Of a DNA stretch of 64,000 bases, positions 24,785-40,386 are shown in pieces (within the stretch, counting starts at the first letter, position 1; every line of letters starts with the position of its first letter). The translations under genes and the position numbers were made by a program. The DNA is taken from IMG/VR virus record IMGVR_UViG_3300046787_000408, positions 124,001 to 188,000 of that record; one strand, written 5' to 3'. The notes below the pieces were generated by a model that was not told the DNA's origin, did not search any database, and saw only the letters and a list, made by a program, of their open reading frames with translations.

Positions 24785-26377
24785 ATGTTTCTTAGTTATA
24801 TCACTTTGGCTGTAGCACTGAGCCTGTCAGTTATTGCTGCCTACTACTCAATTGCAGGCCTGGCTGCTATTTTTGCTGCGGCCGTGATTCCCATTGTTGT
24901 AATGGGATCAATCCTAGAACTAGGCAAAGTTGTGGTCACACTGTGGCTGCATGAGTATTGGCGGCAGTGCCGTTTTCTCATGAAAATGTACTTGGTGCCT
25001 GCTGTGGCAGTGCTAATGCTAGTGACCAGCATGGGCATCTTTGGTTTCTTGAGCAAAGCACACTCAGACCAAAGCCTAGTGTCAGGCGATGTACAAAGCA
25101 AAATTGCAGTCTACGACGAAAAGATCAAGGTATCACAGGACAATATAGATGTTAATCGCAAAGCACTTAAACAACTCGATGAGGCGGTGGACCAAGTCAT
25201 GGGCCGCTCGAGTTCAGAAACGGGTGCAGACAAAGCCGTTGCTATACGCAAATCCCAAGCGAAAGAAAGAACTAGACTACTGGCTGAAATTGCAGCCGAG
25301 CAGAAAACAATTAGTGATCTCAGACAAGAACGAGCTCCCATTGCGGCTGAAGTACGCAAGGTTGAAGCTGAAGTAGGTCCTATCAAGTACATTGCTACAC
25401 TGATCTACGGTGACAACCCAGATGCCAACTTGCTGGAAAAAGCAGTGACATGGGTTATTATGTTGTTGGTTATAGTGTTTGATCCTTTGGCCATCATGAT
25501 GCTGTTGGCTGCAACAGAAAGTCTAAAGTGGGAAAAGCAAAGACTGTTTGACTTGCTCAAGATGCCTGTGCCGGAGCCAGAACCTGATCTTAAAGTGGTC
25601 AATCAAATGCTGGCCGCCGCGGCAACGATTCCTGAACCACAGGAGCCGGTTGTAGAGCCAAAGTCTGGGCCCATGAAGTTTTTTGATCCAGGCGAGCATC
25701 CCAAAGACTACGACGAGACTGAGGTGCCGGTGCCAGAACCTGTACCAGAGAAAACCCTACTAGAACAGCATCCGTATCTTGGACTAGGATTTTCAAACTT
25801 TAAAGATCTCAAGCCAATGCCGTATATACCCGAAAGAAAACTAGAAGTATATTCGGGCAACCCTGATGATTTCAAAGAGCCATGGAGTGAAGAAGACCGG
25901 CTACGTTTGGCCGCAGTTATGGAAACATTCCTTGACAAGAATCAAGATGAAGATCCTGAACTAAGCGATGACCATCCCAGTGTCAAAGCAGCCATGGTCA
26001 AATGGAAATTGGCCAACCCAGGTGCCACTCTCAAAGAACAACGTGCAATGTTTGCTCGTGGCGAGATTGCTGAATTACCTTGGCTAGCTCTAATTGATAA
26101 CAATGCTAGTGAATCAGGTTTTGGGTTGACATTGCCAGCTACTGCTCACAAAGGCGATACCTGGGTATTAACTAGTACATTGCCTAATCGGGTATATAAG
26201 TTTAATGGTAACAAGTGGATTTCAGTTGACAAAACTCAAACAGATAACTATACTTACAACGAAGCATACCTGGACCACCTAATAGCCAAGCTAGAATCTG
26301 GTGAATACGATATAGAATTGCTCAGCAGTAATGAGCAAGAACAGATTACTCAACGTCTACAAAAGAAAACAATATGA
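24785..26377 (+). CDS. Membrane protein: N-terminal TM helices, coiled coil, Pro/Glu-rich linker
   Basis: Hydrophobic N-terminus, heptad region, VFDPLA TM segment, PEPEP repeats. Confidence 0.7.
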
Positions 26378-27564
26378 AATCAAACGACTCTATCTACAAT
26401 TGCAGTTTCTGTGGCAAACACAAAGATGTTGTGACCAAACTAATCGTGGGCGTAAATGTCGCCATCTGTAACGAATGTGTGGACCTGTGCCAAAACTTAC
26501 TGGTAGACACCCCGGTAGAAATCACAGCCCCCAGCACACCCAGCCTGGATCCGCGCAAGATTCGTGAGCATCTAGACCAGTATGTGATTGGACAGGATCA
26601 AGCCAAGATCCTGTTGAGTGTGGCTATTGCCAATCACTACAAGCGCATTGCCAATCAAGATCCCGAACACGAAATTGAAAAAGCCAACATTCTCATGCTT
26701 GGCCCCACAGGCTCGGGCAAAACACTTTTGGCACGTACCGTGGCTCGGTATCTTGACGTGCCGTTTGTGATTGCAGATGCCACCAGCTTGACCGAAGCTG
26801 GATACGTAGGCGACGATGTGGAAAGCTTGATCTCAAGATTGTTTGCTGCATCAGGCGGTGACATTGAAAAGACACAACGTGGTATTGTGTTTGTGGATGA
26901 GATTGACAAGATCAGTCGCAAAAGCGAAGGCACTAGTATCACTCGTGATGTGTCCGGAGAAGGTGTGCAACAAGCCTTGTTAAAATTGGTAGAAGGTACC
27001 AAGTGCAGAGTCATGCCCACAGGCGGACGCAAACATCCTTCGGGGGAAACAGTAGAAATTGATACTACCAATATCTTGTTTATTGCAGGCGGCGCATTTG
27101 TAGGCATGGAAAATATTGTCAAGAGCCGTGTGAAAGGCACCAGTATTGGTTTCAGTGCTGATGTACGTACAGATGAAAAAGCTCAGCTGAGCCAGACCAC
27201 TCCTGATGACTTGGTACGCTTTGGCTTGATCCCTGAATTTGTGGGACGTTTTCCAGCTTGGGTTGCACTGCAAGAACTGGACAAAACAGATCTTGTGCGT
27301 ATTCTTAAAGAAGTCAAACACAACTATGTGAGTCAGTATCAGTGGTTGTTCAAGCAAGATGAAGTTGAGCTGGAGTTCTCAAAAGACAGCTTGGACTTGA
27401 TCGCTGAGCGCACTATCAAGAACAAAACAGGCGCACGTGGCCTGCACAGTGAACTAGAGCGTGTGTTGTTACCGCACATGTACAATCTAGCTCGCTATCG
27501 CTCAGATGGTATCAAGCATGTGGATATTGATCAAGCTCTGGTAAATAGTCCCAAGGAACTCTAA
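26374..27564 (+). CDS. clpX: ATP-dependent Clp protease ATP-binding subunit ClpX
   Basis: C4 zinc finger CSFC...[16 protein letters not shown] pore loop, [22 protein letters not shown] loop, TGARGL. Confidence 0.97.
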
Positions 27565-27570
27565 AGGATT

Positions 27571-27795
27571 ATGGAAAAATTACACGGTAGATCAGTATTG
27601 GTACAGGATGGCAACGTAGATCGTGCCTTGCGCAAGTTCAAGAAAAAGATAGCTGCTTCGGGGCTGTTGAATGACCTGCGTGATCGAGAGCACTATGTTA
27701 AGCCTACCACGGCTCGCAAACTCAAAGCAAGTGCTGCCAAGAGCCGCTGGCGCAAGAAAATGCGTGAACAAGAACTGCCCAAAAAACAGTTTTAA
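27571..27795 (+). CDS. rpsU: Ribosomal protein bS21
   Basis: VLVQDGNVDRALRKFKKK...REHYVKPTTARK; small and basic. Confidence 0.9.
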   Translation: MEKLHGRSVLVQDGNVDRALRKFKKKIAASGLLNDLRDREHYVKPTTARKLKASAAKSRWRKKMREQELPKKQF

Positions 27796-28031
27796 TGTAT
27801 ATTGAGTTTAGGTACAAACCTTCAAATATTCTCACAGCCGCAATCAACCATGAAATGCATGCATGGTCAGATCGCTACAGTATTCCTTACTTTACCAAAA
27901 CAGTCAAGTATGGCAAAAGATTCACGTTTGATGATGATGCACACTACAGTTTCTTTGCCATGACTTGGAATCCCACAATGTCTTTGCCCGAATACCACTT
28001 GATTGAACCAATGAAAATTGACAGAAAATGA
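27795..28031 (+). CDS. Hypothetical protein (LRW-family-like)
   Basis: FTFDDDAHYSFFAMTW motif; TAATG-coupled. Confidence 0.6.
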   Translation: MYIEFRYKPSNILTAAINHEMHAWSDRYSIPYFTKTVKYGKRFTFDDDAHYSFFAMTWNPTMSLPEYHLIEPMKIDRK

Positions 28032-28040
28032 GATTTCCTG

Positions 28041-28115
28041 TATAAATACATTTGTAGTGCCGATGGTCGGGCTACATTTCAAAACGTCATACTTGCTTAA
28101 TAGGAGAAAAACATG
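28041..28115 (+). promoter_or_regulatory. TATAAATA late-type promoter plus ROSE-like two-hairpin leader of hsp20
   Basis: TATAAATA at 28041; hairpin TGTAGT-G-CCGA-TGG-TCGG-GCTACA; SD hairpin CTTGCT-TAAT-AGGAG with bulged G. Confidence 0.65.
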
Positions 28116-28568
28116 ACAAAAACTCTAACCCTTCGTTCTTTCGACATTCCTGCAATTCACAAATTTGGTATCGGTTTCGATAACATGTTTGATGAACTCA
28201 TGCGTGTAAGTGCCCAACAAGGCAATACCAACTACCCACCTTATAACATTGTGCAAGTCAATGAAGACGAGTACATGATCAGTGTGGCTGTAGCAGGCTT
28301 TAGTCTTGACAACCTAAGCGTGACCAAGGACAAAAAAGTCTTGATCATTGAAGGCAAGCAAACTACAGGCGATGTTGCTGATGAAGAAGTAGTCAACTAC
28401 TTGCACAAAGGCATCAGCGAGCGCAGTTTCCGCAGAGAATTTCAATTGGCAGATCATGTGGAAATTACCAATGCACACCTTGAACTTGGTATCTTGAACG
28501 TGCGTTTAAAGCGTGAAGTCCCAGAAGAAGCCAAGCCAAAGAGCATTGCGATCACTTATACTTCTTGA
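28113..28568 (+). CDS. Small heat-shock protein, Hsp20/IbpA family
   Basis: IGFDNMF, NYPPYNI, ISVAVAGF, YLHKGISERSFRREFQLA, GIL motif. Confidence 0.95.
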   Translation: MTKTLTLRSFDIPAIHKFGIGFDNMFDELMRVSAQQGNTNYPPYNIVQVNEDEYMISVAVAGFSLDNLSVTKDKKVLIIEGKQTTGDVADEEVVNYLHKGISERSFRREFQLADHVEITNAHLELGILNVRLKREVPEEAKPKSIAITYTS

Positions 28569-28581
28569 TCACAACGTAAAT

Positions 28582-28610
28582 ACAGTGGCAAGGCAACTTG
28601 CCACTGTTTA
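28582..28610 (+). terminator. 11-bp hairpin ACAGTGGCAAG-GCAA-CTTGCCACTGT
   Basis: Perfect stem, GNRA loop, short T tail, after the hsp20 stop; a TAAATA lies just upstream, so it may instead be a 5' stabiliser. Confidence 0.55.
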
Positions 28611-28618
28611 GGAACACC

Positions 28619-29323
28619 ATGGCTAGAATAGAACACAATCTTATCTCTGCTGAAGAGATCAAGTTATTCAAACAATATTACAACACATTTTCTGCAGACA
28701 AATATGTAAATGCCACCACAAACGGTGAGGTCGCAGACGGTTGTGCCATGAATGATCAAGAACCTATAATTGATCATAGGCTGTTGATCGAACCTTCAAA
28801 AAGTCAGCAATGTTGGGATATTGTACAAAGAGTCACCCATCACTTTTTGCCCGGATGCGAAAATATATGGGCCAACTATCAGCGCCAAAGTTTGCCTCAC
28901 AGAACACATGTGGACGATTACTGCAAACATTTTGATGTCCCTACATATACTATTATTATTGCACTGGATACACATCCTGAATTCAATGTAATACTATGCA
29001 AAGAAGAAGCAGATAGTAACGCCCATCTAAGTCAGATGTTAAAGGATTGGGCTACACCTGCACCTGATCCAGCAACCAAGATCTGCAACATCAGTGAAAC
29101 AGAAGATCTTGAACATTCAATTGACCCAGTTCATCAGCAATACTTTCTAGACTGGTTGACACCCGATGGTGTTTTCCGTTATACTGCTGGTAGTGGTGTA
29201 TTCTTCTTGGCATCACAGATACATTGCTCAGGAAACTGGCACAAGTACAACAAGTTTATCAACAAAGACCTCGTGCAAATTCATGCACACTACAACAAAG
29301 GAACAAGCAATGTCTCAATCTGA
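28619..29323 (+). CDS. 2OG-Fe(II) oxygenase-like protein
   Basis: HRTHVDD (HxD) and distal IHCSG His; sits between hsp20 and clpS. Confidence 0.55.
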   Translation: MARIEHNLISAEEIKLFKQYYNTFSADKYVNATTNGEVADGCAMNDQEPIIDHRLLIEPSKSQQCWDIVQRVTHHFLPGCENIWANYQRQSLPHRTHVDDYCKHFDVPTYTIIIALDTHPEFNVILCKEEADSNAHLSQMLKDWATPAPDPATKICNISETEDLEHSIDPVHQQYFLDWLTPDGVFRYTAGSGVFFLASQIHCSGNWHKYNKFINKDLVQIHAHYNKGTSNVSI

Positions 29324-29621
29324 AACAAAAACACGTATCAAACCTTCTGAGGCAGTGAAAGAACCGCCAATGTACAAGGTGATTTATCTCAATGACAACC
29401 AAACTACCATGGAGTTTGTTGTAGAAAGTTTGATGGAGTTTTTTGACTACAACGAAGAAACTGCGTTTACTATTACCACAGATATTCACGAAGAAGGTTC
29501 AGCAGTGGTAGCAGTGCTACCATTTGAAATTGCTGAACAAAAAGGAATTGAAGTCACAGTGAGCGCTCGAGCTCTAAGTTTCCCGTTGCAGATCAAACTT
29601 GAGCCAGATACTGTTCAATAA
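29310..29621 (+). CDS. clpS: Clp protease adaptor ClpS
   Basis: PPMYKVIYLNDNQTTMEFVV, IHEEGSAVV, EIAEQK, FPLQIKLEP. Confidence 0.93.
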   Translation: MSQSETKTRIKPSEAVKEPPMYKVIYLNDNQTTMEFVVESLMEFFDYNEETAFTITTDIHEEGSAVVAVLPFEIAEQKGIEVTVSARALSFPLQIKLEPDTVQ

Positions 29622-35738: not shown

Positions 35739-35765
35739 AAAAGCCCCTTTCGGGGCTTTTTATTT
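35737..35765. terminator. Bidirectional intrinsic terminator
   Basis: AAAAAAGCCCC-TTTC-GGGGCTTTT between convergent genes. Confidence 0.9.
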
Positions 35766-36071
35766 TTGTGCCGGCTTGCGGGCTCGGGGTTTTTTGGCTG
35801 ATGTAATTGCAGCTGGCGTTGTGGCCGGCTTGGCTGCTGGTTTTGCTACTGGCTTGGCTCGTGGTTTACGAGCAGGTTTAGCAGTGGCTTCGACTCGATC
35901 GTTGGCTGGTTTACCAACTTCAGCAGGTGCGGCCACAACAGGTGCAGCCTCCATCACTGGAGCAACCTGTACAGGTGTTTCCACTTTGTAAGGTACTGCT
36001 TCTGGTTGTACTGCTGGCGCCTGTGCCGCAGGGCTGGGGTTTTTAAACCAATCAAAAATTGCTTTTAGCAT
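35760..36071 (-). CDS. Ala/Lys/Pro-rich protein with a histone-H1/PhaF-like basic tail
   Basis: AKPARKPRAKPVAKPAAKPA...AKKPRARKPAQK; AGGAG SD and TAAATA upstream on the minus strand. Confidence 0.7.
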   Translation of the reverse strand: MLKAIFDWFKNPSPAAQAPAVQPEAVPYKVETPVQVAPVMEAAPVVAAPAEVGKPANDRVEATAKPARKPRAKPVAKPAAKPATTPAAITSAKKPRARKPAQK

Positions 36072-36158: not shown

Positions 36159-36177
36159 TATGTTGCACTGCAACATA
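36159..36177. promoter_or_regulatory. Perfect palindrome TATGTTGCA-C-TGCAACATA, PhaR-box-like operator
   Basis: 9-bp arms, TGC-N3-GCA core, overlaps TAAATA (36176-36181) upstream of the phasin-like gene. Confidence 0.6.
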
Positions 36178-36257
36178 AATATATGTTACAATAACACATA
36201 GGACGCTGGATAGGCCGGGTTCTATAACTAACTCGCTTAAATTAGGAGAAACACATG
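36176..36257 (+). promoter_or_regulatory. Late-type promoter plus second ROSE-like leader
   Basis: TAAATA; hairpin ATAGGAC-G-CTGG-ATAGG-CCGG-GTTCTAT; CTCGCT-TAAATT-AGGAG. Confidence 0.6.
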
Positions 36258-36530
36258 TTTACAGCAGACGCAATCATCGACACCGTGCAAAACGGTAAAA
36301 AGCAATTTGTCAACACTTTCGTTCAGAACGAAACTGCAAAAGACGCAATGGTTAAATTCATTGACGCTCAAGCTGACTACACCAAGAAGGCAGCTAAAGT
36401 TGGAATGGACACATTTACCACTTTGACTTCAGAAGCAGTCAAAGCCGGACAAGAAGCCATGAAGTTTGATTACACCAAATTTGGTGAAGGCATTATGAAA
36501 GCTTACACAGCTACTACAGCCAAAAAGTAA
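36255..36530 (+). CDS. Phasin-like small amphipathic helical protein
   Basis: 91 aa, Ala/Lys/Thr-rich, no Cys or Trp, helical pattern resembling PHA granule proteins. Confidence 0.5.
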   Translation: MFTADAIIDTVQNGKKQFVNTFVQNETAKDAMVKFIDAQADYTKKAAKVGMDTFTTLTSEAVKAGQEAMKFDYTKFGEGIMKAYTATTAKK

Positions 36531-36547: not shown

Positions 36548-36572
36548 AAAAGCCCCAAATTTGGGGCTTTTT
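36548..36572 (+). terminator. Intrinsic terminator
   Basis: AAAAGCCCC-AAATTT-GGGGCTTTTT. Confidence 0.85.
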
Positions 36573-36575
36573 CAC

Positions 36576-36630
36576 GGTTGACCAAAAATGCCCAATTTGC
36601 TATAATATACACATATTAACGCAAAAGGAG
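36576..36630 (+). promoter_or_regulatory. Promoter cassette variant
   Basis: TTGACC-17-TATAAT-ATACACATA...AAGGAG; first 40 nt match cassette copy 1. Confidence 0.88.
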
Positions 36631-36636
36631 CCAGAC

Positions 36637-36912
36637 ATGAAAGCACTTCAAGCCTACATTGACAACAAGAACAAATACATGGCATTGTTCCAGGGCAAGC
36701 GCATTGATCCCTTGTACGAAGTTCAAACTGCCGCTGGTCGTAAGCGTGTGGCAGAGACAATCGACTGTGCTCTGAGCCCAGAAAATCTAAGCTGTGATGG
36801 TGAACTGCCCCGTGCAGAAGTTAACCGTCGCTATCGTGAACTCACAGCGGCCGCAAAGGACTTGATCAAACTTGACCCTAGCATGGCTCAGTATATGTAC
36901 GAATTTGGTTGA
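36637..36912 (+). CDS. Hypothetical early protein
   Basis: CALSPENLSCDGE motif; behind cassette. Confidence 0.75.
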   Translation: MKALQAYIDNKNKYMALFQGKRIDPLYEVQTAAGRKRVAETIDCALSPENLSCDGELPRAEVNRRYRELTAAAKDLIKLDPSMAQYMYEFG

Positions 36913-36957
36913 CTCAAAATGCCCAATTTGTTATAATATACACATAGCAACAAGGAG
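36907..36957 (+). promoter_or_regulatory. Promoter cassette variant
   Basis: TTGACT-17-TATAAT-ATACACATAGCAACAAGGAG. Confidence 0.88.
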
Positions 36958-37104: not shown

Positions 37105-37496
37105 ATCTAACCAAATTTAGTCGTGATCGTATGATGGTAACTGCCAGTCGTTGGACAGTGCCTCGGGATTACTTTGATCCCATGTACAATTACTTGGTGC
37201 ATGGTTTTGCTCCGGGAAGCTTCTGGTCAGCAGTGTTGGCCAATGACTTTATGCGGGCCGTACAGCACAGCCATCCTAGCAACACCATCGACGCCCTGAA
37301 ACACACTGTGGGCTGGATTCAGGACAGTTTTCCCGAGCAAAGCTACGGTGACAGTGATAAAGTTATTCTTTGGCAGGGGCTAGAGCCTATCCAACGTCGC
37401 CGAATCCTGGAATCCACAGACATGATCTACACCGAACACCAAGAAGTCATGTTGGCTCTGCAAGGCAAGCAATCATATGAACCCATGCTGTACTGA
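37101..37496 (+). CDS. Hypothetical protein
   Basis: YLVHGFAPGSFWSAVLANDF motif. Confidence 0.72.
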   Translation: MNLTKFSRDRMMVTASRWTVPRDYFDPMYNYLVHGFAPGSFWSAVLANDFMRAVQHSHPSNTIDALKHTVGWIQDSFPEQSYGDSDKVILWQGLEPIQRRRILESTDMIYTEHQEVMLALQGKQSYEPMLY

Positions 37497-37525
37497 TTGA
37501 CCAATAATTCCCGTTTTGCTATAAT
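37497..37525 (+). promoter_or_regulatory. sigma70-type promoter
   Basis: TTGACC-17-TATAAT-ATACACATA..AAGGAG. Confidence 0.88.
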
Positions 37526-37550
37526 ATACACATAAAGAAAGGAGCACATC

Positions 37551-37749: not shown

Positions 37750-37995
37750 ATGGGCTGGGTAGTTTACGATGTTGATTCTGGTCGCATGATCAAGTATTAC
37801 AAAAAGCCTGGCCCTGCTAAGTCTGAAGTAACACGACAGCGAAAGTTCAATTCAGAAATGCAAGCATCGTATGGCAACCATCGAATGCTCGAGTACGCAG
37901 CCTGCTCCTATCGTGACTATGAAGGACAACTCATGGGTCTGCGTGGTGCAGACTTTAAATTCTGGCAATTTTGCAACGCACAACCCAACACTTGA
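37750..37995 (+). CDS. Hypothetical protein
   Basis: AGGAG SD, 81 aa. Confidence 0.7.
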   Translation: MGWVVYDVDSGRMIKYYKKPGPAKSEVTRQRKFNSEMQASYGNHRMLEYAACSYRDYEGQLMGLRGADFKFWQFCNAQPNT

Positions 37996-38020
37996 CCAAT
38001 AATTCCCATTTTGTTATAAT
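37992..38020 (+). promoter_or_regulatory. sigma70-type promoter (near-leaderless)
   Basis: TTGACC-17-TATAAT, ATG 9 nt later. Confidence 0.85.
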
Positions 38021-38029
38021 TACACTACT

Positions 38030-38179
38030 ATGAAGCCCATATCCTTTACACTGCAAGCACCGCGACAGCGTCGACATCAAGCACTGTTTGATCAAAACCT
38101 GCCGTTTCGTGGCCGTGTGGAACAGCCCAAAACAGTGTACAAGCGCAAACCCAAACACAAAAAACAGGAGCAAGAATGA
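38030..38179 (+). CDS. Small basic protein, ArfA-like (below cutoff)
   Basis: MKPISFTLQAPRQRRHQALFDQNLPFRGRVEQPKTVYKRKPKHKKQEQE*, 49 aa, own promoter, ATGA-coupled. Confidence 0.55.
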   Translation: MKPISFTLQAPRQRRHQALFDQNLPFRGRVEQPKTVYKRKPKHKKQEQE

Positions 38180-39813: not shown

Positions 39814-40386
39814 ATGACACAAACAACAGAAATTCTTGAATCCAATCATACTCAATCTCTCAATGACAATGGTATGTATGTGTTCATGGGCGAGGTAACA
39901 CAAGAGGCTATCTGTCCTATTATAGAGTGGATCTTGCACGAAAACTTTGTGACCAAGAAAAAGAAAAAAGAACTGTTGTTGATGATCTGTAGCGAAGGTG
40001 GCGATACCAGTGCGGCATTTGCCTTGATTGATGTAATGCGTAGCAGTGCCATTCCTGTCAAGACTGTGGGGCTGGGCATGATTGCCAGTGCTGGATTGTT
40101 GATGTTTATTGCAGGAACACCAGGGCGCAGGATACTCACTCCCAACACTAGTATTTTAAGTCATCAGTTTAGCTGGTACAATGAAGGCAAGGCACACGAA
40201 CTGTTTGCCACAATGAAAGAGTTTGAGCTTACCCAGGCTAGAATGTTGGCCCACTATCAGGCCTGCACTGGGCTAACAGCTGAACAGGTGCGTACCAGTT
40301 TATTGCCACCCCAAGATGTATGGCTGAGTGCGCAAGACGCATTGGCCTTGCATATTTGTGACTTTGTGGCAGAACTAGCCCGTTAG
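39814..40386 (+). CDS. Divergent ClpP-family protease subunit
   Basis: MICSEGG, IASAG (Ser), ILSHQF (His), QDVWLSA (Asp). Confidence 0.85.
   Translation: MTQTTEILESNHTQSLNDNGMYVFMGEVTQEAICPIIEWILHENFVTKKKKKELLLMICSEGGDTSAAFALIDVMRSSAIPVKTVGLGMIASAGLLMFIAGTPGRRILTPNTSILSHQFSWYNEGKAHELFATMKEFELTQARMLAHYQACTGLTAEQVRTSLLPPQDVWLSAQDALALHICDFVAELAR

What the first reader, a model, noticed from the sequence alone, without database searches (positions are those of the whole stretch)
36176..36257. Second ROSE-like leader of the same architecture, on a non-heat-shock gene
Seen: the phasin-like gene leader copies the hsp20 layout with a different sequence: TAAATA, a stem/bulged-G/stem hairpin (ATAGGAC-G-CTGG-ATAGG-CCGG-GTTCTAT), then CUCGCU-UAAAUU-AGGAG 8 nt before ATG. 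Two leaders with different sequences but the same fold suggest selection on structure. Established: ROSE elements are mostly known upstream of small heat-shock genes. Inference: the two genes form a small co-regulated stress regulon, or the hairpin binds a phage translational regulator.
Basis: partly seen in the sequence, partly recalled or inferred. Interest (0 to 1): 0.6.

Follow-up and report, generated by a model that had tools for sequence, protein, structure and literature searches.

The report
Phage ROSE-type leader on non-chaperone gene
The 57-nt leader of a small conserved jumbo-phage gene is a real, evolutionarily conserved two-hairpin RNA of the ROSE "RNA thermometer" type, the same RNA family that heads the phage's own small heat-shock gene, which suggests that these uncultured phages tie translation of an unknown protein to temperature or protein-folding stress.

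Summary
Window 36198-36248 folds into a stem/bulged-G/stem hairpin followed by a weak hairpin in which CUCGCU, with an unpaired G, pairs with the AGGAG ribosome-binding site. It lies between a sigma-70-type promoter and the ATG at 36255.

- In 60 distinct homologous leaders from related jumbo phages, hairpin I keeps its pairing through compensatory changes at 9 of 11 pairs. The anti-SD/SD pairing is also kept.
- A covariance model built only from these leaders finds the phage's hsp20 leader (37.6 bits) and nothing else in the 300-kb genome.
- The model finds both leaders in all 10 related genomes searched, and a third copy on groES in two of them.
- It also finds genuine Pseudomonas ibpA ROSE elements and the hsp20 leaders of two cultured phages.
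- Rfam ROSE_3 matches both window leaders over its full length, but below threshold (21 bits against 43).

The element is therefore a divergent short ROSE-type leader copied onto a non-chaperone gene. Thermosensing is inferred, not shown, and folding calculations do not set it apart from control leaders. "Phasin-like" is weakly supported. The promoter does carry a conserved palindrome that fits the published PhaR operator motif. I class it as a new variant of a known kind.

The parts
36160..36176 (.). Perfect palindrome ATGTTGCACTGCAACAT overlapping the -35 box; operator-like site that fits the published PhaR motif
   Evidence: Sequence. It is unique in the window at 0 mismatches. It matches YTKNTGCRNYGCANMAR (PMC12849132) at 15 of 17 positions, including all core positions. 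Of 62 distinct homologous upstream regions, 32 have a site with at most 2 mismatches at -89 to -101. Background is 0.016 per 130 nt.
36163..36192 (+). Predicted sigma-70-type promoter: -35 TTGCAC (36163-36168), 18-nt spacer, extended -10 TGtTACAAT (36184-36192)
   Evidence: Read from the sequence. A TACAAT/TATAAT box lies at the same distance from hairpin I in the homologous leaders. The consensus scan did not list it. There are no RNA data.
36198..36225 (+). Hairpin I: 7-bp outer stem, unpaired G36205, 4-bp inner stem, 5-nt loop. It sits at or within 1-2 nt of the predicted 5' end of the mRNA.
   Evidence: MFE and centroid fold. Nine of 11 pairs show compensatory changes and 93-95% of cells are paired in 60 leaders. 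In 69 out-of-sample leaders 98.7% are paired.
36232..36248 (+). Hairpin II: anti-SD CUCGCU (36232-36237, unpaired G36235), loop UAAAUU, SD AGGAG (36244-36248)
   Evidence: Fold. Eighty-six to 87% of cells are paired on MAFFT alignments. C:G changes to U:A in 8 leaders and to U:G in 26. It aligns with the validated E. coli ibpA hairpin CUCGCUGAUUUCAGGAG. dG37 is -2.7 kcal/mol.
36255..36530 (+). CDS of a conserved 91-aa all-helical protein of unknown family
   Evidence: ORF. The database holds 1422 homologs, none with a precomputed Pfam domain among the 120 listed. There is no Pfam, PHROG or NCBIfam hit above cut-off. AF2 predicts helix 4-22 plus helix 26-90 at pLDDT 81.
36548..36573 (+). Intrinsic-terminator-like hairpin (GCCCCAAA/TTTGGGGC followed by a T run), which makes the gene monocistronic
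   Evidence: Sequence. The terminator-like part of Rfam's rimP and Phe_leader models aligns here.
28051..28112 (+). Paralogous ROSE-type leader of the phage hsp20 (ibpA-like) gene: hairpin I with an unpaired G, CUUGCU/AGGAG hairpin, and an outer helix GUCAU/AUGAC that includes the start codon
   Evidence: ROSE_3 scores 20.8 bits and R1 scores 37.6 bits.
28113..28568 (+). Hsp20 / IbpA-like small heat-shock protein gene
   Evidence: PF00011 56 bits. PHROG 432 and NCBIfam IbpA 122 bits. It is 39% identical to E. coli IbpA and keeps the Arg93 equivalent.

Best explanation
Window 36198-36254 is the 5' untranslated leader of a monocistronic mRNA: promoter 36163-36192, CDS 36255-36530, terminator about 36548-36573. 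It is a divergent member of the short, two-hairpin ROSE class of translational control RNAs, the class known from Pseudomonas ibpA.

Hairpin I is a stable stem-loop with an unpaired G at the 5' end. By analogy with Pseudomonas ibpA, it probably scaffolds the fold and protects the mRNA.

Hairpin II is a weak helix in which CUCGCU, with an unpaired G opposite the ribosome-binding site, pairs with AGGAG. This limits 30S binding when cold or unstressed and opens as temperature rises.

The same RNA family heads the phage's ibpA-like hsp20 gene, and groES in some relatives. Translation of the 91-aa protein is therefore coupled to that of the phage's chaperones.

Shown here: the sequence and fold, conservation with covariation, family identity with the hsp20 leader, and reciprocal similarity to bacterial ROSE elements.

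Inferred: the transcription start, SD occlusion in vivo, and temperature as the signal.
For: - Rfam ROSE_3 aligns both window leaders over the full model (21.3 and 20.8 bits). It reaches 34.4 and 31.8 bits on relatives.
- Covariation in 60 distinct leaders: 90% of cells are paired, against 35-61% when partners are slid. None of 500 shuffles reach the observed pairing or covariation score. Nine of 11 hairpin-I pairs show compensatory changes.
- Where the SD is AGGAA instead of AGGAG, the closing C:G pair of hairpin II becomes U:A (8 leaders).
- Model R1, built only from leaders of the 91-aa gene, finds the window's hsp20 leader at 37.6 bits (E about 7e-8). The next hit scores 14 bits.
- R1 finds all 48 distinct hsp20 leaders of relatives at 28-46 bits.
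- R1 finds both leaders in 10 of 10 related jumbo-phage genomes (75-100% complete, nine at 92% or more), plus groES leaders in 2 of them.
- R1 finds Pseudomonas and Stutzerimonas ibpA ROSE elements at 20-33 bits, exactly upstream of ibpA. The E. coli ibpA and ibpB SD hairpins are its top local hits.
- The ROSE signature occurs only at the two leaders in the window.
- Defining ROSE features are listed in PMC3669281 and PMC13104619: the U(U/C)GCU anti-SD, an unpaired G opposite the SD, and a 5' GC-rich stable hairpin. All are present.
- Isolated hairpin II is 2-3 kcal/mol weaker than the validated E. coli and Pseudomonas-group hairpins. It equals the E. coli 37 C stability at about 22 C. That would fit a cool freshwater setting, though the sample's origin is not given.
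Against: - Both window leaders fall far below Rfam's gathering score (43 bits).
- Predicted SD accessibility and its temperature dependence do not separate these leaders from 40 control leaders in the window. At 25 C the control median for P(SD unpaired) is 0.008, against 0.055 for this leader.
- The single-sequence fold z-score is only -1.5.
- RNAalifold does not predict hairpin II on its own.
- Most hairpin-II pairs cannot covary because the SD is fixed. Conservation of CUYGCU could therefore reflect a bound factor rather than pairing.
- The promoter is sigma-70-like, not sigma-32-like. The downstream gene is not a recognisable chaperone.
Confidence: 0.6

Rival explanations
1. The shared leader is the binding site for translational feedback by the phage's own IbpA-like Hsp20. 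Free Hsp20 would bind the ROSE-type 5'UTRs of hsp20, the 91-aa gene and (where present) groES, and repress them. Aggregating proteins would titrate Hsp20 away and release translation. The signal would then be protein-folding load rather than temperature, or in addition to it.
For: - E. coli IbpA binds the ibpA and ibpB 5'UTRs and represses their translation. Arg93 is essential for RNA binding, and IbpB lacks it (PMC10474464).
- The phage Hsp20 is more IbpA-like than IbpB-like (NCBIfam 122 against 91 bits; 39% against 31% identity). It keeps the Arg in GISERSF, which aligns to GIAERNF. The divergent phage Hsp20s also keep it.
- Nucleotides around the unpaired G of hairpin I (GC...GG) are conserved in sequence from Pseudomonas to phage, beyond what pairing requires. 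That is what a protein contact would produce.
- There are exactly two or three such leaders per genome, and one is always on hsp20.
Against: There is no binding evidence. The Arg is widely conserved in alpha-crystallin domains, so it is not specific. The RNA determinants of IbpA binding are not defined in the papers read. This rival is compatible with the thermometer model rather than exclusive of it.
Confidence: 0.25
2. The leader is not a sensor. Hairpin I would be only a 5'-terminal stabiliser that protects a highly expressed mRNA from decay. The weak CUCGCU/AGGAG helix would merely set a constant translation rate, or be a relic of the ibpA leader from which it was copied.
For: - A 5' stem-loop stabilises mRNAs, and this role was proposed for hairpin I of Pseudomonas ibpA (PMC3669281).
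- Hairpin II is very weak (-2.7 kcal/mol at 37 C).
- Predicted SD accessibility is not lower than in control leaders.
- Strong covariation is confined to hairpin I.
Against: - The CUYGCU anti-SD with its unpaired G is kept in nearly all of 60 diverged leaders, while the loop between it and the SD varies in length and sequence.
- The closing pair co-varies with the SD variant.
- The same arrangement is kept on three different genes and in distant phages.
- A relic would have decayed at 63-89% protein identity.
Confidence: 0.12
3. The resemblance to ROSE is chance. An AT-rich leader happens to contain a hairpin and a short complement to its SD.
For: The Rfam score is sub-threshold and the z-score is -1.5.
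Against: - Covariation across 60 leaders.
- Cross-detection of the hsp20, groES and bacterial ibpA leaders by a model that never saw them.
- The signature occurs only at the two leaders.
Confidence: 0.02

Closest known systems
Short two-hairpin ROSE-like RNA thermometer of Pseudomonas ibpA (Rfam ROSE_3, RF02523; Krajewski et al. 2013, PMC3669281)
   Same: - The 5'UTR is about 57-62 nt long.
- Hairpin I is GC-rich, with an unpaired G in the context RY-G-CYG...CRG-GRY.
- The linker is single-stranded.
- Hairpin II pairs AACU(C/U)GCU with AGGAG and leaves an unpaired G.
- The AUG is unpaired in this leader.
- CM detection is reciprocal.
   Different: - It is encoded by a phage and lies on a gene that is not a small heat-shock gene.
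- It is driven by a sigma-70-type promoter rather than a sigma-32 promoter.
- Hairpin II lacks the flanking G-C clamps. It has 5 pairs instead of 7-9 and is 2-3 kcal/mol weaker.
- It scores below Rfam's gathering cut-off.
E. coli ibpA/ibpB ROSE-like leaders with IbpA-mediated translational autorepression (PMC10474464)
   Same: The SD hairpin core is identical: CUCGCU-loop-AGGAG. An IbpA-type sHsp with the RNA-binding Arg is encoded in the same genome.
   Different: The E. coli leader is longer and has more hairpins. Binding of the phage sHsp to either leader is untested.
ROSE / ROSE-like thermometers on non-heat-shock genes (P. aeruginosa rhlA and lasI; PMC13104619)
   Same: They show that a ROSE-type SD hairpin can be placed on genes outside the heat-shock set.
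   Different: Those are bacterial virulence and quorum-sensing genes tuned to 37 C. Here the gene belongs to an uncultured phage, its product is unknown, and the helix is weaker.
Phasin genes repressed by PhaR at a promoter-overlapping palindrome (R. eutropha phaP1; PMC12849132)
   Same: The palindrome at 36160-36176 fits the motif YTKNTGCRNYGCANMAR at all well-conserved positions. It overlaps a sigma-70 promoter, as the PhaR sites do at phaP1. The product is a small, all-helical protein.
   Different: - The protein does not match Phasin_2: Pfam is below cut-off and hhalign gives 6%.
- No phage genome searched encodes PhaR.
- The host is unknown and binding is untested.

Membership tests
ROSE-like RNA thermometer (short Pseudomonas type, Rfam ROSE_3) | Lies in the 5'UTR directly upstream of the regulated start codon | tested here: met
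   The element ends 6 nt before the ATG at 36255 and starts about 6 nt after a predicted -10 box. The start site is predicted, not mapped.
ROSE-like RNA thermometer (short Pseudomonas type, Rfam ROSE_3) | The 3'-proximal hairpin pairs the SD with a U(U/C)GCU anti-SD motif | tested here: met
   CUCGCU at 36232-36237 pairs with AGGAG at 36244-36248 in the MFE and centroid folds. The motif is kept as CUCGCU or CUUGCU in most of 60 leaders.
ROSE-like RNA thermometer (short Pseudomonas type, Rfam ROSE_3) | Unpaired G opposite the SD | tested here: met
   G36235 is unpaired in the fold. It falls at the unpaired model position of ROSE_3 and R1.
ROSE-like RNA thermometer (short Pseudomonas type, Rfam ROSE_3) | One or more stable 5' hairpins preceding the sensing hairpin | tested here: met
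   Hairpin I at 36198-36225. Nine of 11 pairs show compensatory changes.
ROSE-like RNA thermometer (short Pseudomonas type, Rfam ROSE_3) | Score at or above the Rfam gathering threshold (43 bits) | tested here: not met
   This leader scores 21.3 bits and the hsp20 leader 20.8. The best relatives reach 34.4 and 34.1 bits.
ROSE-like RNA thermometer (short Pseudomonas type, Rfam ROSE_3) | Controls a small heat-shock gene | tested here: not met
   The downstream 91-aa protein has no HSP20 or other chaperone domain. The paralogous leader at 28051-28112 does precede hsp20.
ROSE-like RNA thermometer (short Pseudomonas type, Rfam ROSE_3) | Heat-shock (sigma-32) promoter upstream, as in bacterial ibpA | tested here: not met
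   The promoters are TTGCAC-N18-TACAAT here and TTGACA-N17-TATAAA at hsp20. Both are of the sigma-70 type.
ROSE-like RNA thermometer (short Pseudomonas type, Rfam ROSE_3) | Temperature-dependent melting of the SD hairpin and temperature-dependent translation | tested here: inconclusive
   Predicted P(SD unpaired) rises from 0.005 at 5 C to 0.155 at 37 C. The 40 control leaders behave similarly or more strongly. Isolated hairpin dG is -5.7 at 15 C and -2.7 at 37 C. An experiment is needed.
IbpA-autoregulated 5'UTR (gamma-proteobacterial ibpA type) | An IbpA-type sHsp with the RNA-binding arginine (E. coli R93) is available in the same system | tested here: met
   Alignment A4: phage GISERSF, IbpA GIAERNF, IbpB GLMNQPF.
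IbpA-autoregulated 5'UTR (gamma-proteobacterial ibpA type) | Direct binding of the sHsp to the leader and repression of translation | not testable with these tools
   Needs filter-binding assays and reporter assays.
Phasin (Pfam Phasin_2, PF09361), for the encoded protein | Sequence or profile match to the family | tested here: not met
   - The window protein has no hit.
- Seven of 37 homologs have weak hits, the best at E 0.0026.
- hhalign against a Phasin_2 alignment gives probability 6%.
- The nearest named language-model clusters are Phasin_2, PHB_acc and PHA_synth_III_E at 0.83-0.87. These count as leads only.
Phasin (Pfam Phasin_2, PF09361), for the encoded protein | Promoter carries a PhaR operator | tested here: inconclusive
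   The site fits the published motif at 15 of 17 positions and is conserved in position in 32 of 62 relatives. The core pattern alone occurs twice in the window against 0.66 expected. Binding is untested.

The most novel reading that the evidence does not exclude
A large clade of uncultured jumbo phages may run its own post-transcriptional stress circuit. One ROSE-type leader, copied onto hsp20, groES and a 91-aa protein, would be read both by temperature and by the phage's IbpA-like Hsp20 acting as an aggregation sensor. The 91-aa gene would in addition be wired into the host's PHB-granule regulator PhaR through a promoter operator. A phage gene would then combine host carbon-storage status with proteostasis or temperature signals.
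Probability: 0.12. Interest if true: 0.8.

Novelty: new variant of a known kind. Interest (0 to 1): 0.6.

Why it matters
RNA thermometers of the ROSE class are textbook regulators of bacterial small heat-shock genes. In the paper library searched here I found no report of them in phages.

The same RNA family turns up in several places:
- on hsp20 in more than a hundred environmental jumbo-phage contigs;
- on hsp20 of cultured Methylophilales phage Melnitz-3 and cyanophage S-SSM6b;
- on groES and on a conserved gene of unknown function within this clade.

All of these fall below Rfam's threshold, so annotation pipelines miss them.

If the leader is functional, phages keep translational stress or temperature control over the chaperones they carry. 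It would also give a first functional handle on a 91-aa protein family with about 1,400 database members. The weak helices suggest thermometers tuned to cool water, which would be useful parts for low-temperature synthetic control.

Tried and rejected
- The genome search with RF02523 on the phage's own genome missed both leaders, because its first-look filter dropped them. I used cmscan on sub-regions and my own model instead.
- The Rfam gathering scan of the whole window returned nothing.
- The SD-accessibility calculation against 40 control leaders did not discriminate. I do not use it as support.
- RNAalifold predicts only hairpin I.
- Identity of the 91-aa protein remains open:
  - Pfam, PHROGs and NCBIfam gave nothing above cut-off.
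  - The PDB sequence profile search gave nothing credible.
  - AF2 plus Foldseek against the PDB gave no match at E <= 0.001.
  - hhalign against Phasin_2 gave 6%.
  - The weak hits to HU (Bac_DNA_binding) and Sigma70_ner were judged compositional.
- Searches of cultured phages: megablast found no match. tblastn with the 91-aa protein found no match.
- Rfam freshwater-2 (27 bits) shares only the SD-to-AUG end with the hsp20 leaders. It is not the same element.
- The weak R1 hits L176, L188 and L164 are a bare promoter/SD or unrelated sequence.
- The 'Campylobacter phage A11a' hit carries the same CUCGCUGAUUUCAGGAG hairpin as E. coli ibpA (same R1 score). Its record is marked UNVERIFIED and is probably enterobacterial DNA.
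I did not try another route.
- No PhaR is encoded in this phage or in 5 related phage genomes (95-100% complete).

Full report
**Context**

The window is bases 124001-188000 of a 299,983-bp IMG/VR virus record, estimated 81% complete, that is, a jumbo phage. The finding lies between two divergent genes. On the minus strand is a 103-aa Ala/Lys/Pro-rich ORF (35760-36071). On the plus strand is a 91-aa ORF (36255-36530).

**Observation**

- Hairpin I spans 36198-36225. It has a 7-bp outer stem, an unpaired G36205, a 4-bp inner stem and the loop AUAGG.
- CUCGCU is at 36232-36237, the loop UAAAUU at 36238-36243, AGGAG at 36244-36248, and the ATG at 36255.
- RNAfold returns this two-hairpin fold as both MFE and centroid. 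G36235 is left unpaired opposite the SD. The z-score against shuffles is only -1.5.

Two details need correction.
- The SD-to-ATG spacer is 6 nt, not 8.
- 'TAAATA' (36176) is promoter spacer. The -10 box is TACAAT at 36187-36192, preceded by TG, with a -35 TTGCAC at 36163-36168. The RNA therefore probably starts at about 36198, with hairpin I at its very 5' end.

A terminator-like hairpin follows the stop codon (about 36548-36573). The unit is therefore monocistronic.

**The hsp20 comparison**

The phage's only HSP20-domain gene is at 28113-28568. It is IbpA-like: NCBIfam IbpA scores 122 bits, and it is 39% identical to E. coli IbpA. Its leader (28051-28112) has four parts:
- a sigma-70-type promoter;
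- a hairpin with an unpaired G;
- a CUUGCU/AGGAG helix;
- an outer helix GUCAU/AUGAC that includes the start codon.

**Is it ROSE-like?**

- Rfam at gathering thresholds finds nothing in the window.
- With E-value reporting, ROSE_3 (RF02523, the Pseudomonas ibpA two-hairpin thermometer) is the best-E-value match to each leader. Both are aligned over the whole model, at 21.3 and 20.8 bits. The gathering score is 43.
- On relatives the score rises to 34.4 (L053, 91-aa gene), 31.8 (L085, hsp20) and 28.9 bits.
- The signature CTYGCT-N3-9-AGGAG occurs exactly twice on both strands of the window, at the two leaders. About 0.3 occurrences are expected by chance.

**Comparative evidence**

The 91-aa protein has 127 relatives in viral contigs. 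Eighty loci were fetched, at 63-89% identity. Many lie on 260-365-kb contigs. It has 1,422 relatives in the protein database.

The 110 nt upstream of these genes show the same layout throughout: promoter, hairpin I, A-rich linker, CUYGCU, a variable loop, then the SD.

Sixty distinct leaders were aligned with MAFFT, with no structural guidance. On these alignments:
- RNAalifold predicts hairpin I, with 9 of 11 pairs showing compensatory changes.
- For the full two-hairpin structure, 90% of cells form standard pairs. This falls to 30-61% when the 3' partners are slid by 1-3 columns.
- None of 500 column shuffles reach the observed pairing, the double-change cell count or the covariation score.
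- The count of pairs with any double change is not significant on alignment A2 (221 of 500 shuffles reach it).

Hairpin II is 86-87% paired.
- Its third pair alternates between C:G (30 leaders) and U:G (26). This is the U(U/C)GCU variation of ROSE.
- Its closing pair is C:G in 44 leaders and U:A in 8. Those 8 are the leaders whose SD is AGGAA.
- The other pairs cannot covary because the SD is fixed.

**One family, few members**

Covariance model R1 was built only from leaders of the 91-aa gene.
- With filters off, it finds the window's hsp20 leader at 37.6 bits (rough E about 7e-8). The next hit in the window scores 14.1 bits.
- In the whole 300-kb record there are just these two hits.
- In ten related genomes (75-100% complete, nine at 92% or more) it finds the 91-aa-gene leader (53-85 bits) and the hsp20 leader (27-46 bits) in all ten.
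- In two of them a third copy (38 bits) sits directly upstream of a GroES homolog.
- The window's genome record has no Cpn10 gene.
- R1 finds all 48 distinct hsp20 leaders of relatives at 28-46 bits.
- On this out-of-sample set, hairpin I is 98.7% paired and 7 of its 9 core pairs show compensatory changes. This alignment is fitted to the model, so it leans towards the model's structure.

**Link to bona fide ROSE elements**

R1 was run on 77 bacterial loci that encode the nearest bacterial Hsp20 homologs.
- Its best hits (20-33 bits) are the leaders immediately upstream of ibpA in Stutzerimonas and about a dozen Pseudomonas species. These are the organisms of the ROSE_3 family.
- In the E. coli ibpAB region, its two top local hits are the SD hairpins of ibpA (CUCGCUGAUUUCAGGAG) and ibpB. 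Both are weak (11.3 and 10.5 bits).

Detection is therefore reciprocal between the phage family and experimentally characterised ROSE-like thermometers. The defining features listed by Krajewski et al. are all present (PMC3669281; also PMC13104619):
- two hairpins;
- a stable GC-rich hairpin I;
- a U(U/C)GCU anti-SD imperfectly paired with the SD;
- an unpaired G opposite the SD.

Features that are not met:
- the Rfam threshold;
- a small heat-shock gene downstream;
- a sigma-32 promoter.

**Other phages**

R1 also detects leaders on the hsp20 genes of cultured phages:
- Methylophilales phage Melnitz-3, at 47.6 bits (ROSE_3 34.1 bits);
- cyanophage S-SSM6b, at 30.1 bits;
- more weakly, phage C48C1 (ROSE_3 26.8 bits) and pelagiphage HTVC115P.

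In the paper library I found no report of ROSE-type elements in phages. That is absence in this library, not proof of absence.

**Mechanism**

The best-supported reading is a ROSE-type translational control leader.
- Hairpin I would be a temperature-insensitive scaffold and 5' stabiliser.
- Hairpin II would be the sensing helix.
- Isolated hairpin II has a predicted dG37 of -2.7 kcal/mol. The E. coli ibpA hairpin has -4.6 and the Pseudomonas-group hairpins -4.7 to -5.8.
- It reaches the E. coli 37 C value at about 22 C. That would suit a cool freshwater setting. This is an inference; the sample's origin is not given.

The evidence against is real. Predicted SD accessibility and its rise with temperature do not distinguish these leaders from 40 control leaders in the window. 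No RNA data could be obtained. Thermosensing is therefore inferred from family resemblance only.

A concrete rival, or complement, comes from E. coli.
- There, IbpA binds the ibpA and ibpB 5'UTRs and represses translation until aggregates titrate it away. Arg93 is essential for this (PMC10474464).
- The phage Hsp20s keep this Arg.
- Bases flanking the unpaired G of hairpin I are conserved in sequence from Pseudomonas to phage.
- The shared leader may therefore be an sHsp operator that puts the 91-aa gene under the same aggregation-sensing feedback.

**The gene product and its promoter**

The 91-aa protein has no family assignment.
- AF2 predicts a short helix plus a 65-residue helix at pLDDT 81.
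- Foldseek finds nothing specific.

Support for 'phasin-like' is weak.
- The nearest named language-model clusters are Phasin_2, PHB_acc and PHA_synth_III_E, at 0.83-0.87.
- Seven of 37 homologs give marginal Phasin_2 hits.
- hhalign against a Phasin_2 alignment gives 6% probability.

One unexpected point bears on this.
- The perfect palindrome ATGTTGCACTGCAACAT (36160-36176) overlaps the -35 box.
- It fits the palindromic PhaR-binding motif deduced for Ralstonia eutropha phasin genes, YTKNTGCRNYGCANMAR, at 15 of 17 positions. All the positions reported as well conserved match (PMC12849132).
- A site with at most 2 mismatches sits at the same place in 32 of 62 distinct homologous upstream regions. 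The background rate is 0.016 per 130 nt.
- The core pattern alone is not rare enough to be significant in one window: 2 found against 0.66 expected.
- Neither this phage nor five related genomes (95-100% complete) encode PhaR.

This remains a lead. The gene may be transcriptionally controlled by a host PhaR-like repressor in addition to the leader.

**Verdict**

The element is a new, sub-threshold, phage-borne variant of a known RNA class, placed on a non-chaperone gene and co-occurring with copies on phage chaperone genes. Whether it senses temperature, sHsp occupancy or both remains to be tested.

Noticed in passing
window 36160-36176: A perfect 17-nt palindrome overlaps the -35 box of the 91-aa gene. 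It fits the published R. eutropha PhaR operator motif at 15 of 17 positions and is conserved in position in about half of the homologous promoters. No PhaR gene is found in the phage genomes searched.
   Followed up: partly
window 35760-36071 (-): The divergent neighbour is a 103-aa Ala/Lys/Pro-rich protein with an 'APYKVE' motif and C-terminal AKKP-type repeats (histone-H1/AlgP-like). It matches no family. A similar gene occupies the same position in a large share of relatives. Some versions have an added CGCGRS...CVGLHKLT motif or an N-terminal hydrophobic helix.
   Followed up: partly
window 36576-36620, 36907-36951, 37495-37539, 37990-38034: There are four copies of a 45-nt near-consensus promoter cassette (TTGACC-N17-TATAAT, 62-89% identical). 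Each precedes a small ORF. The cassette differs from the promoters of the two ROSE-type genes.
   Followed up: partly
window 26374-29621 and 39814-40386: The phage carries a set of proteostasis and translation genes around hsp20: a ClpX-like ATPase (26374-27564), a ribosomal protein S21-like ORF (27571-27795), a ClpS-like sequence within 29166-29621, and ClpP (39814-40386; Pfam 1.2e-25). ClpX, S21 and ClpS were read from the translations only. None has a ROSE-type leader.
   Followed up: partly
L175 1501-1565 and L187 (related phage genomes G002, G006): A third ROSE-type leader (38 bits with R1) sits directly upstream of a GroES homolog in two related jumbo phages. The window's genome record has no Cpn10 gene.
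   Followed up: yes
L273 240-303 (Methylophilales phage Melnitz-3); L271 247-309 (cyanophage S-SSM6b): The hsp20 genes of cultured marine phages also carry ROSE-type leaders (R1 47.6 and 30.1 bits; ROSE_3 34.1 bits on Melnitz-3). All are below Rfam's gathering score, so they would go unannotated.
   Followed up: partly
L085 521-603, L156 521-603: Rfam freshwater-2 RNA (RF02980) gives 27-bit sub-threshold hits on hsp20 leaders. The agreement is mostly at the 3' end, AAAGGAGAAAACAAAUG. That metagenomic motif may therefore come from leaders of related freshwater phages.
   Followed up: partly
window 37969-37983: A second match to the PhaR-motif core (TTTTGCAACGCACAA) lies just upstream of the -35 box of the promoter cassette at 37992. 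It may well be chance: 2 found against 0.66 expected.
   Followed up: no
L190, L191 (genome contigs): Contigs binned as Haliscomenobacter and Sediminibacterium MAGs encode an Hsp20 about 80% identical to the phage's. They are probably mis-binned phage contigs and say little about the host. The strong SD sites and TTGACA/TATAAT promoters point to a proteobacterial host instead.
   Followed up: no
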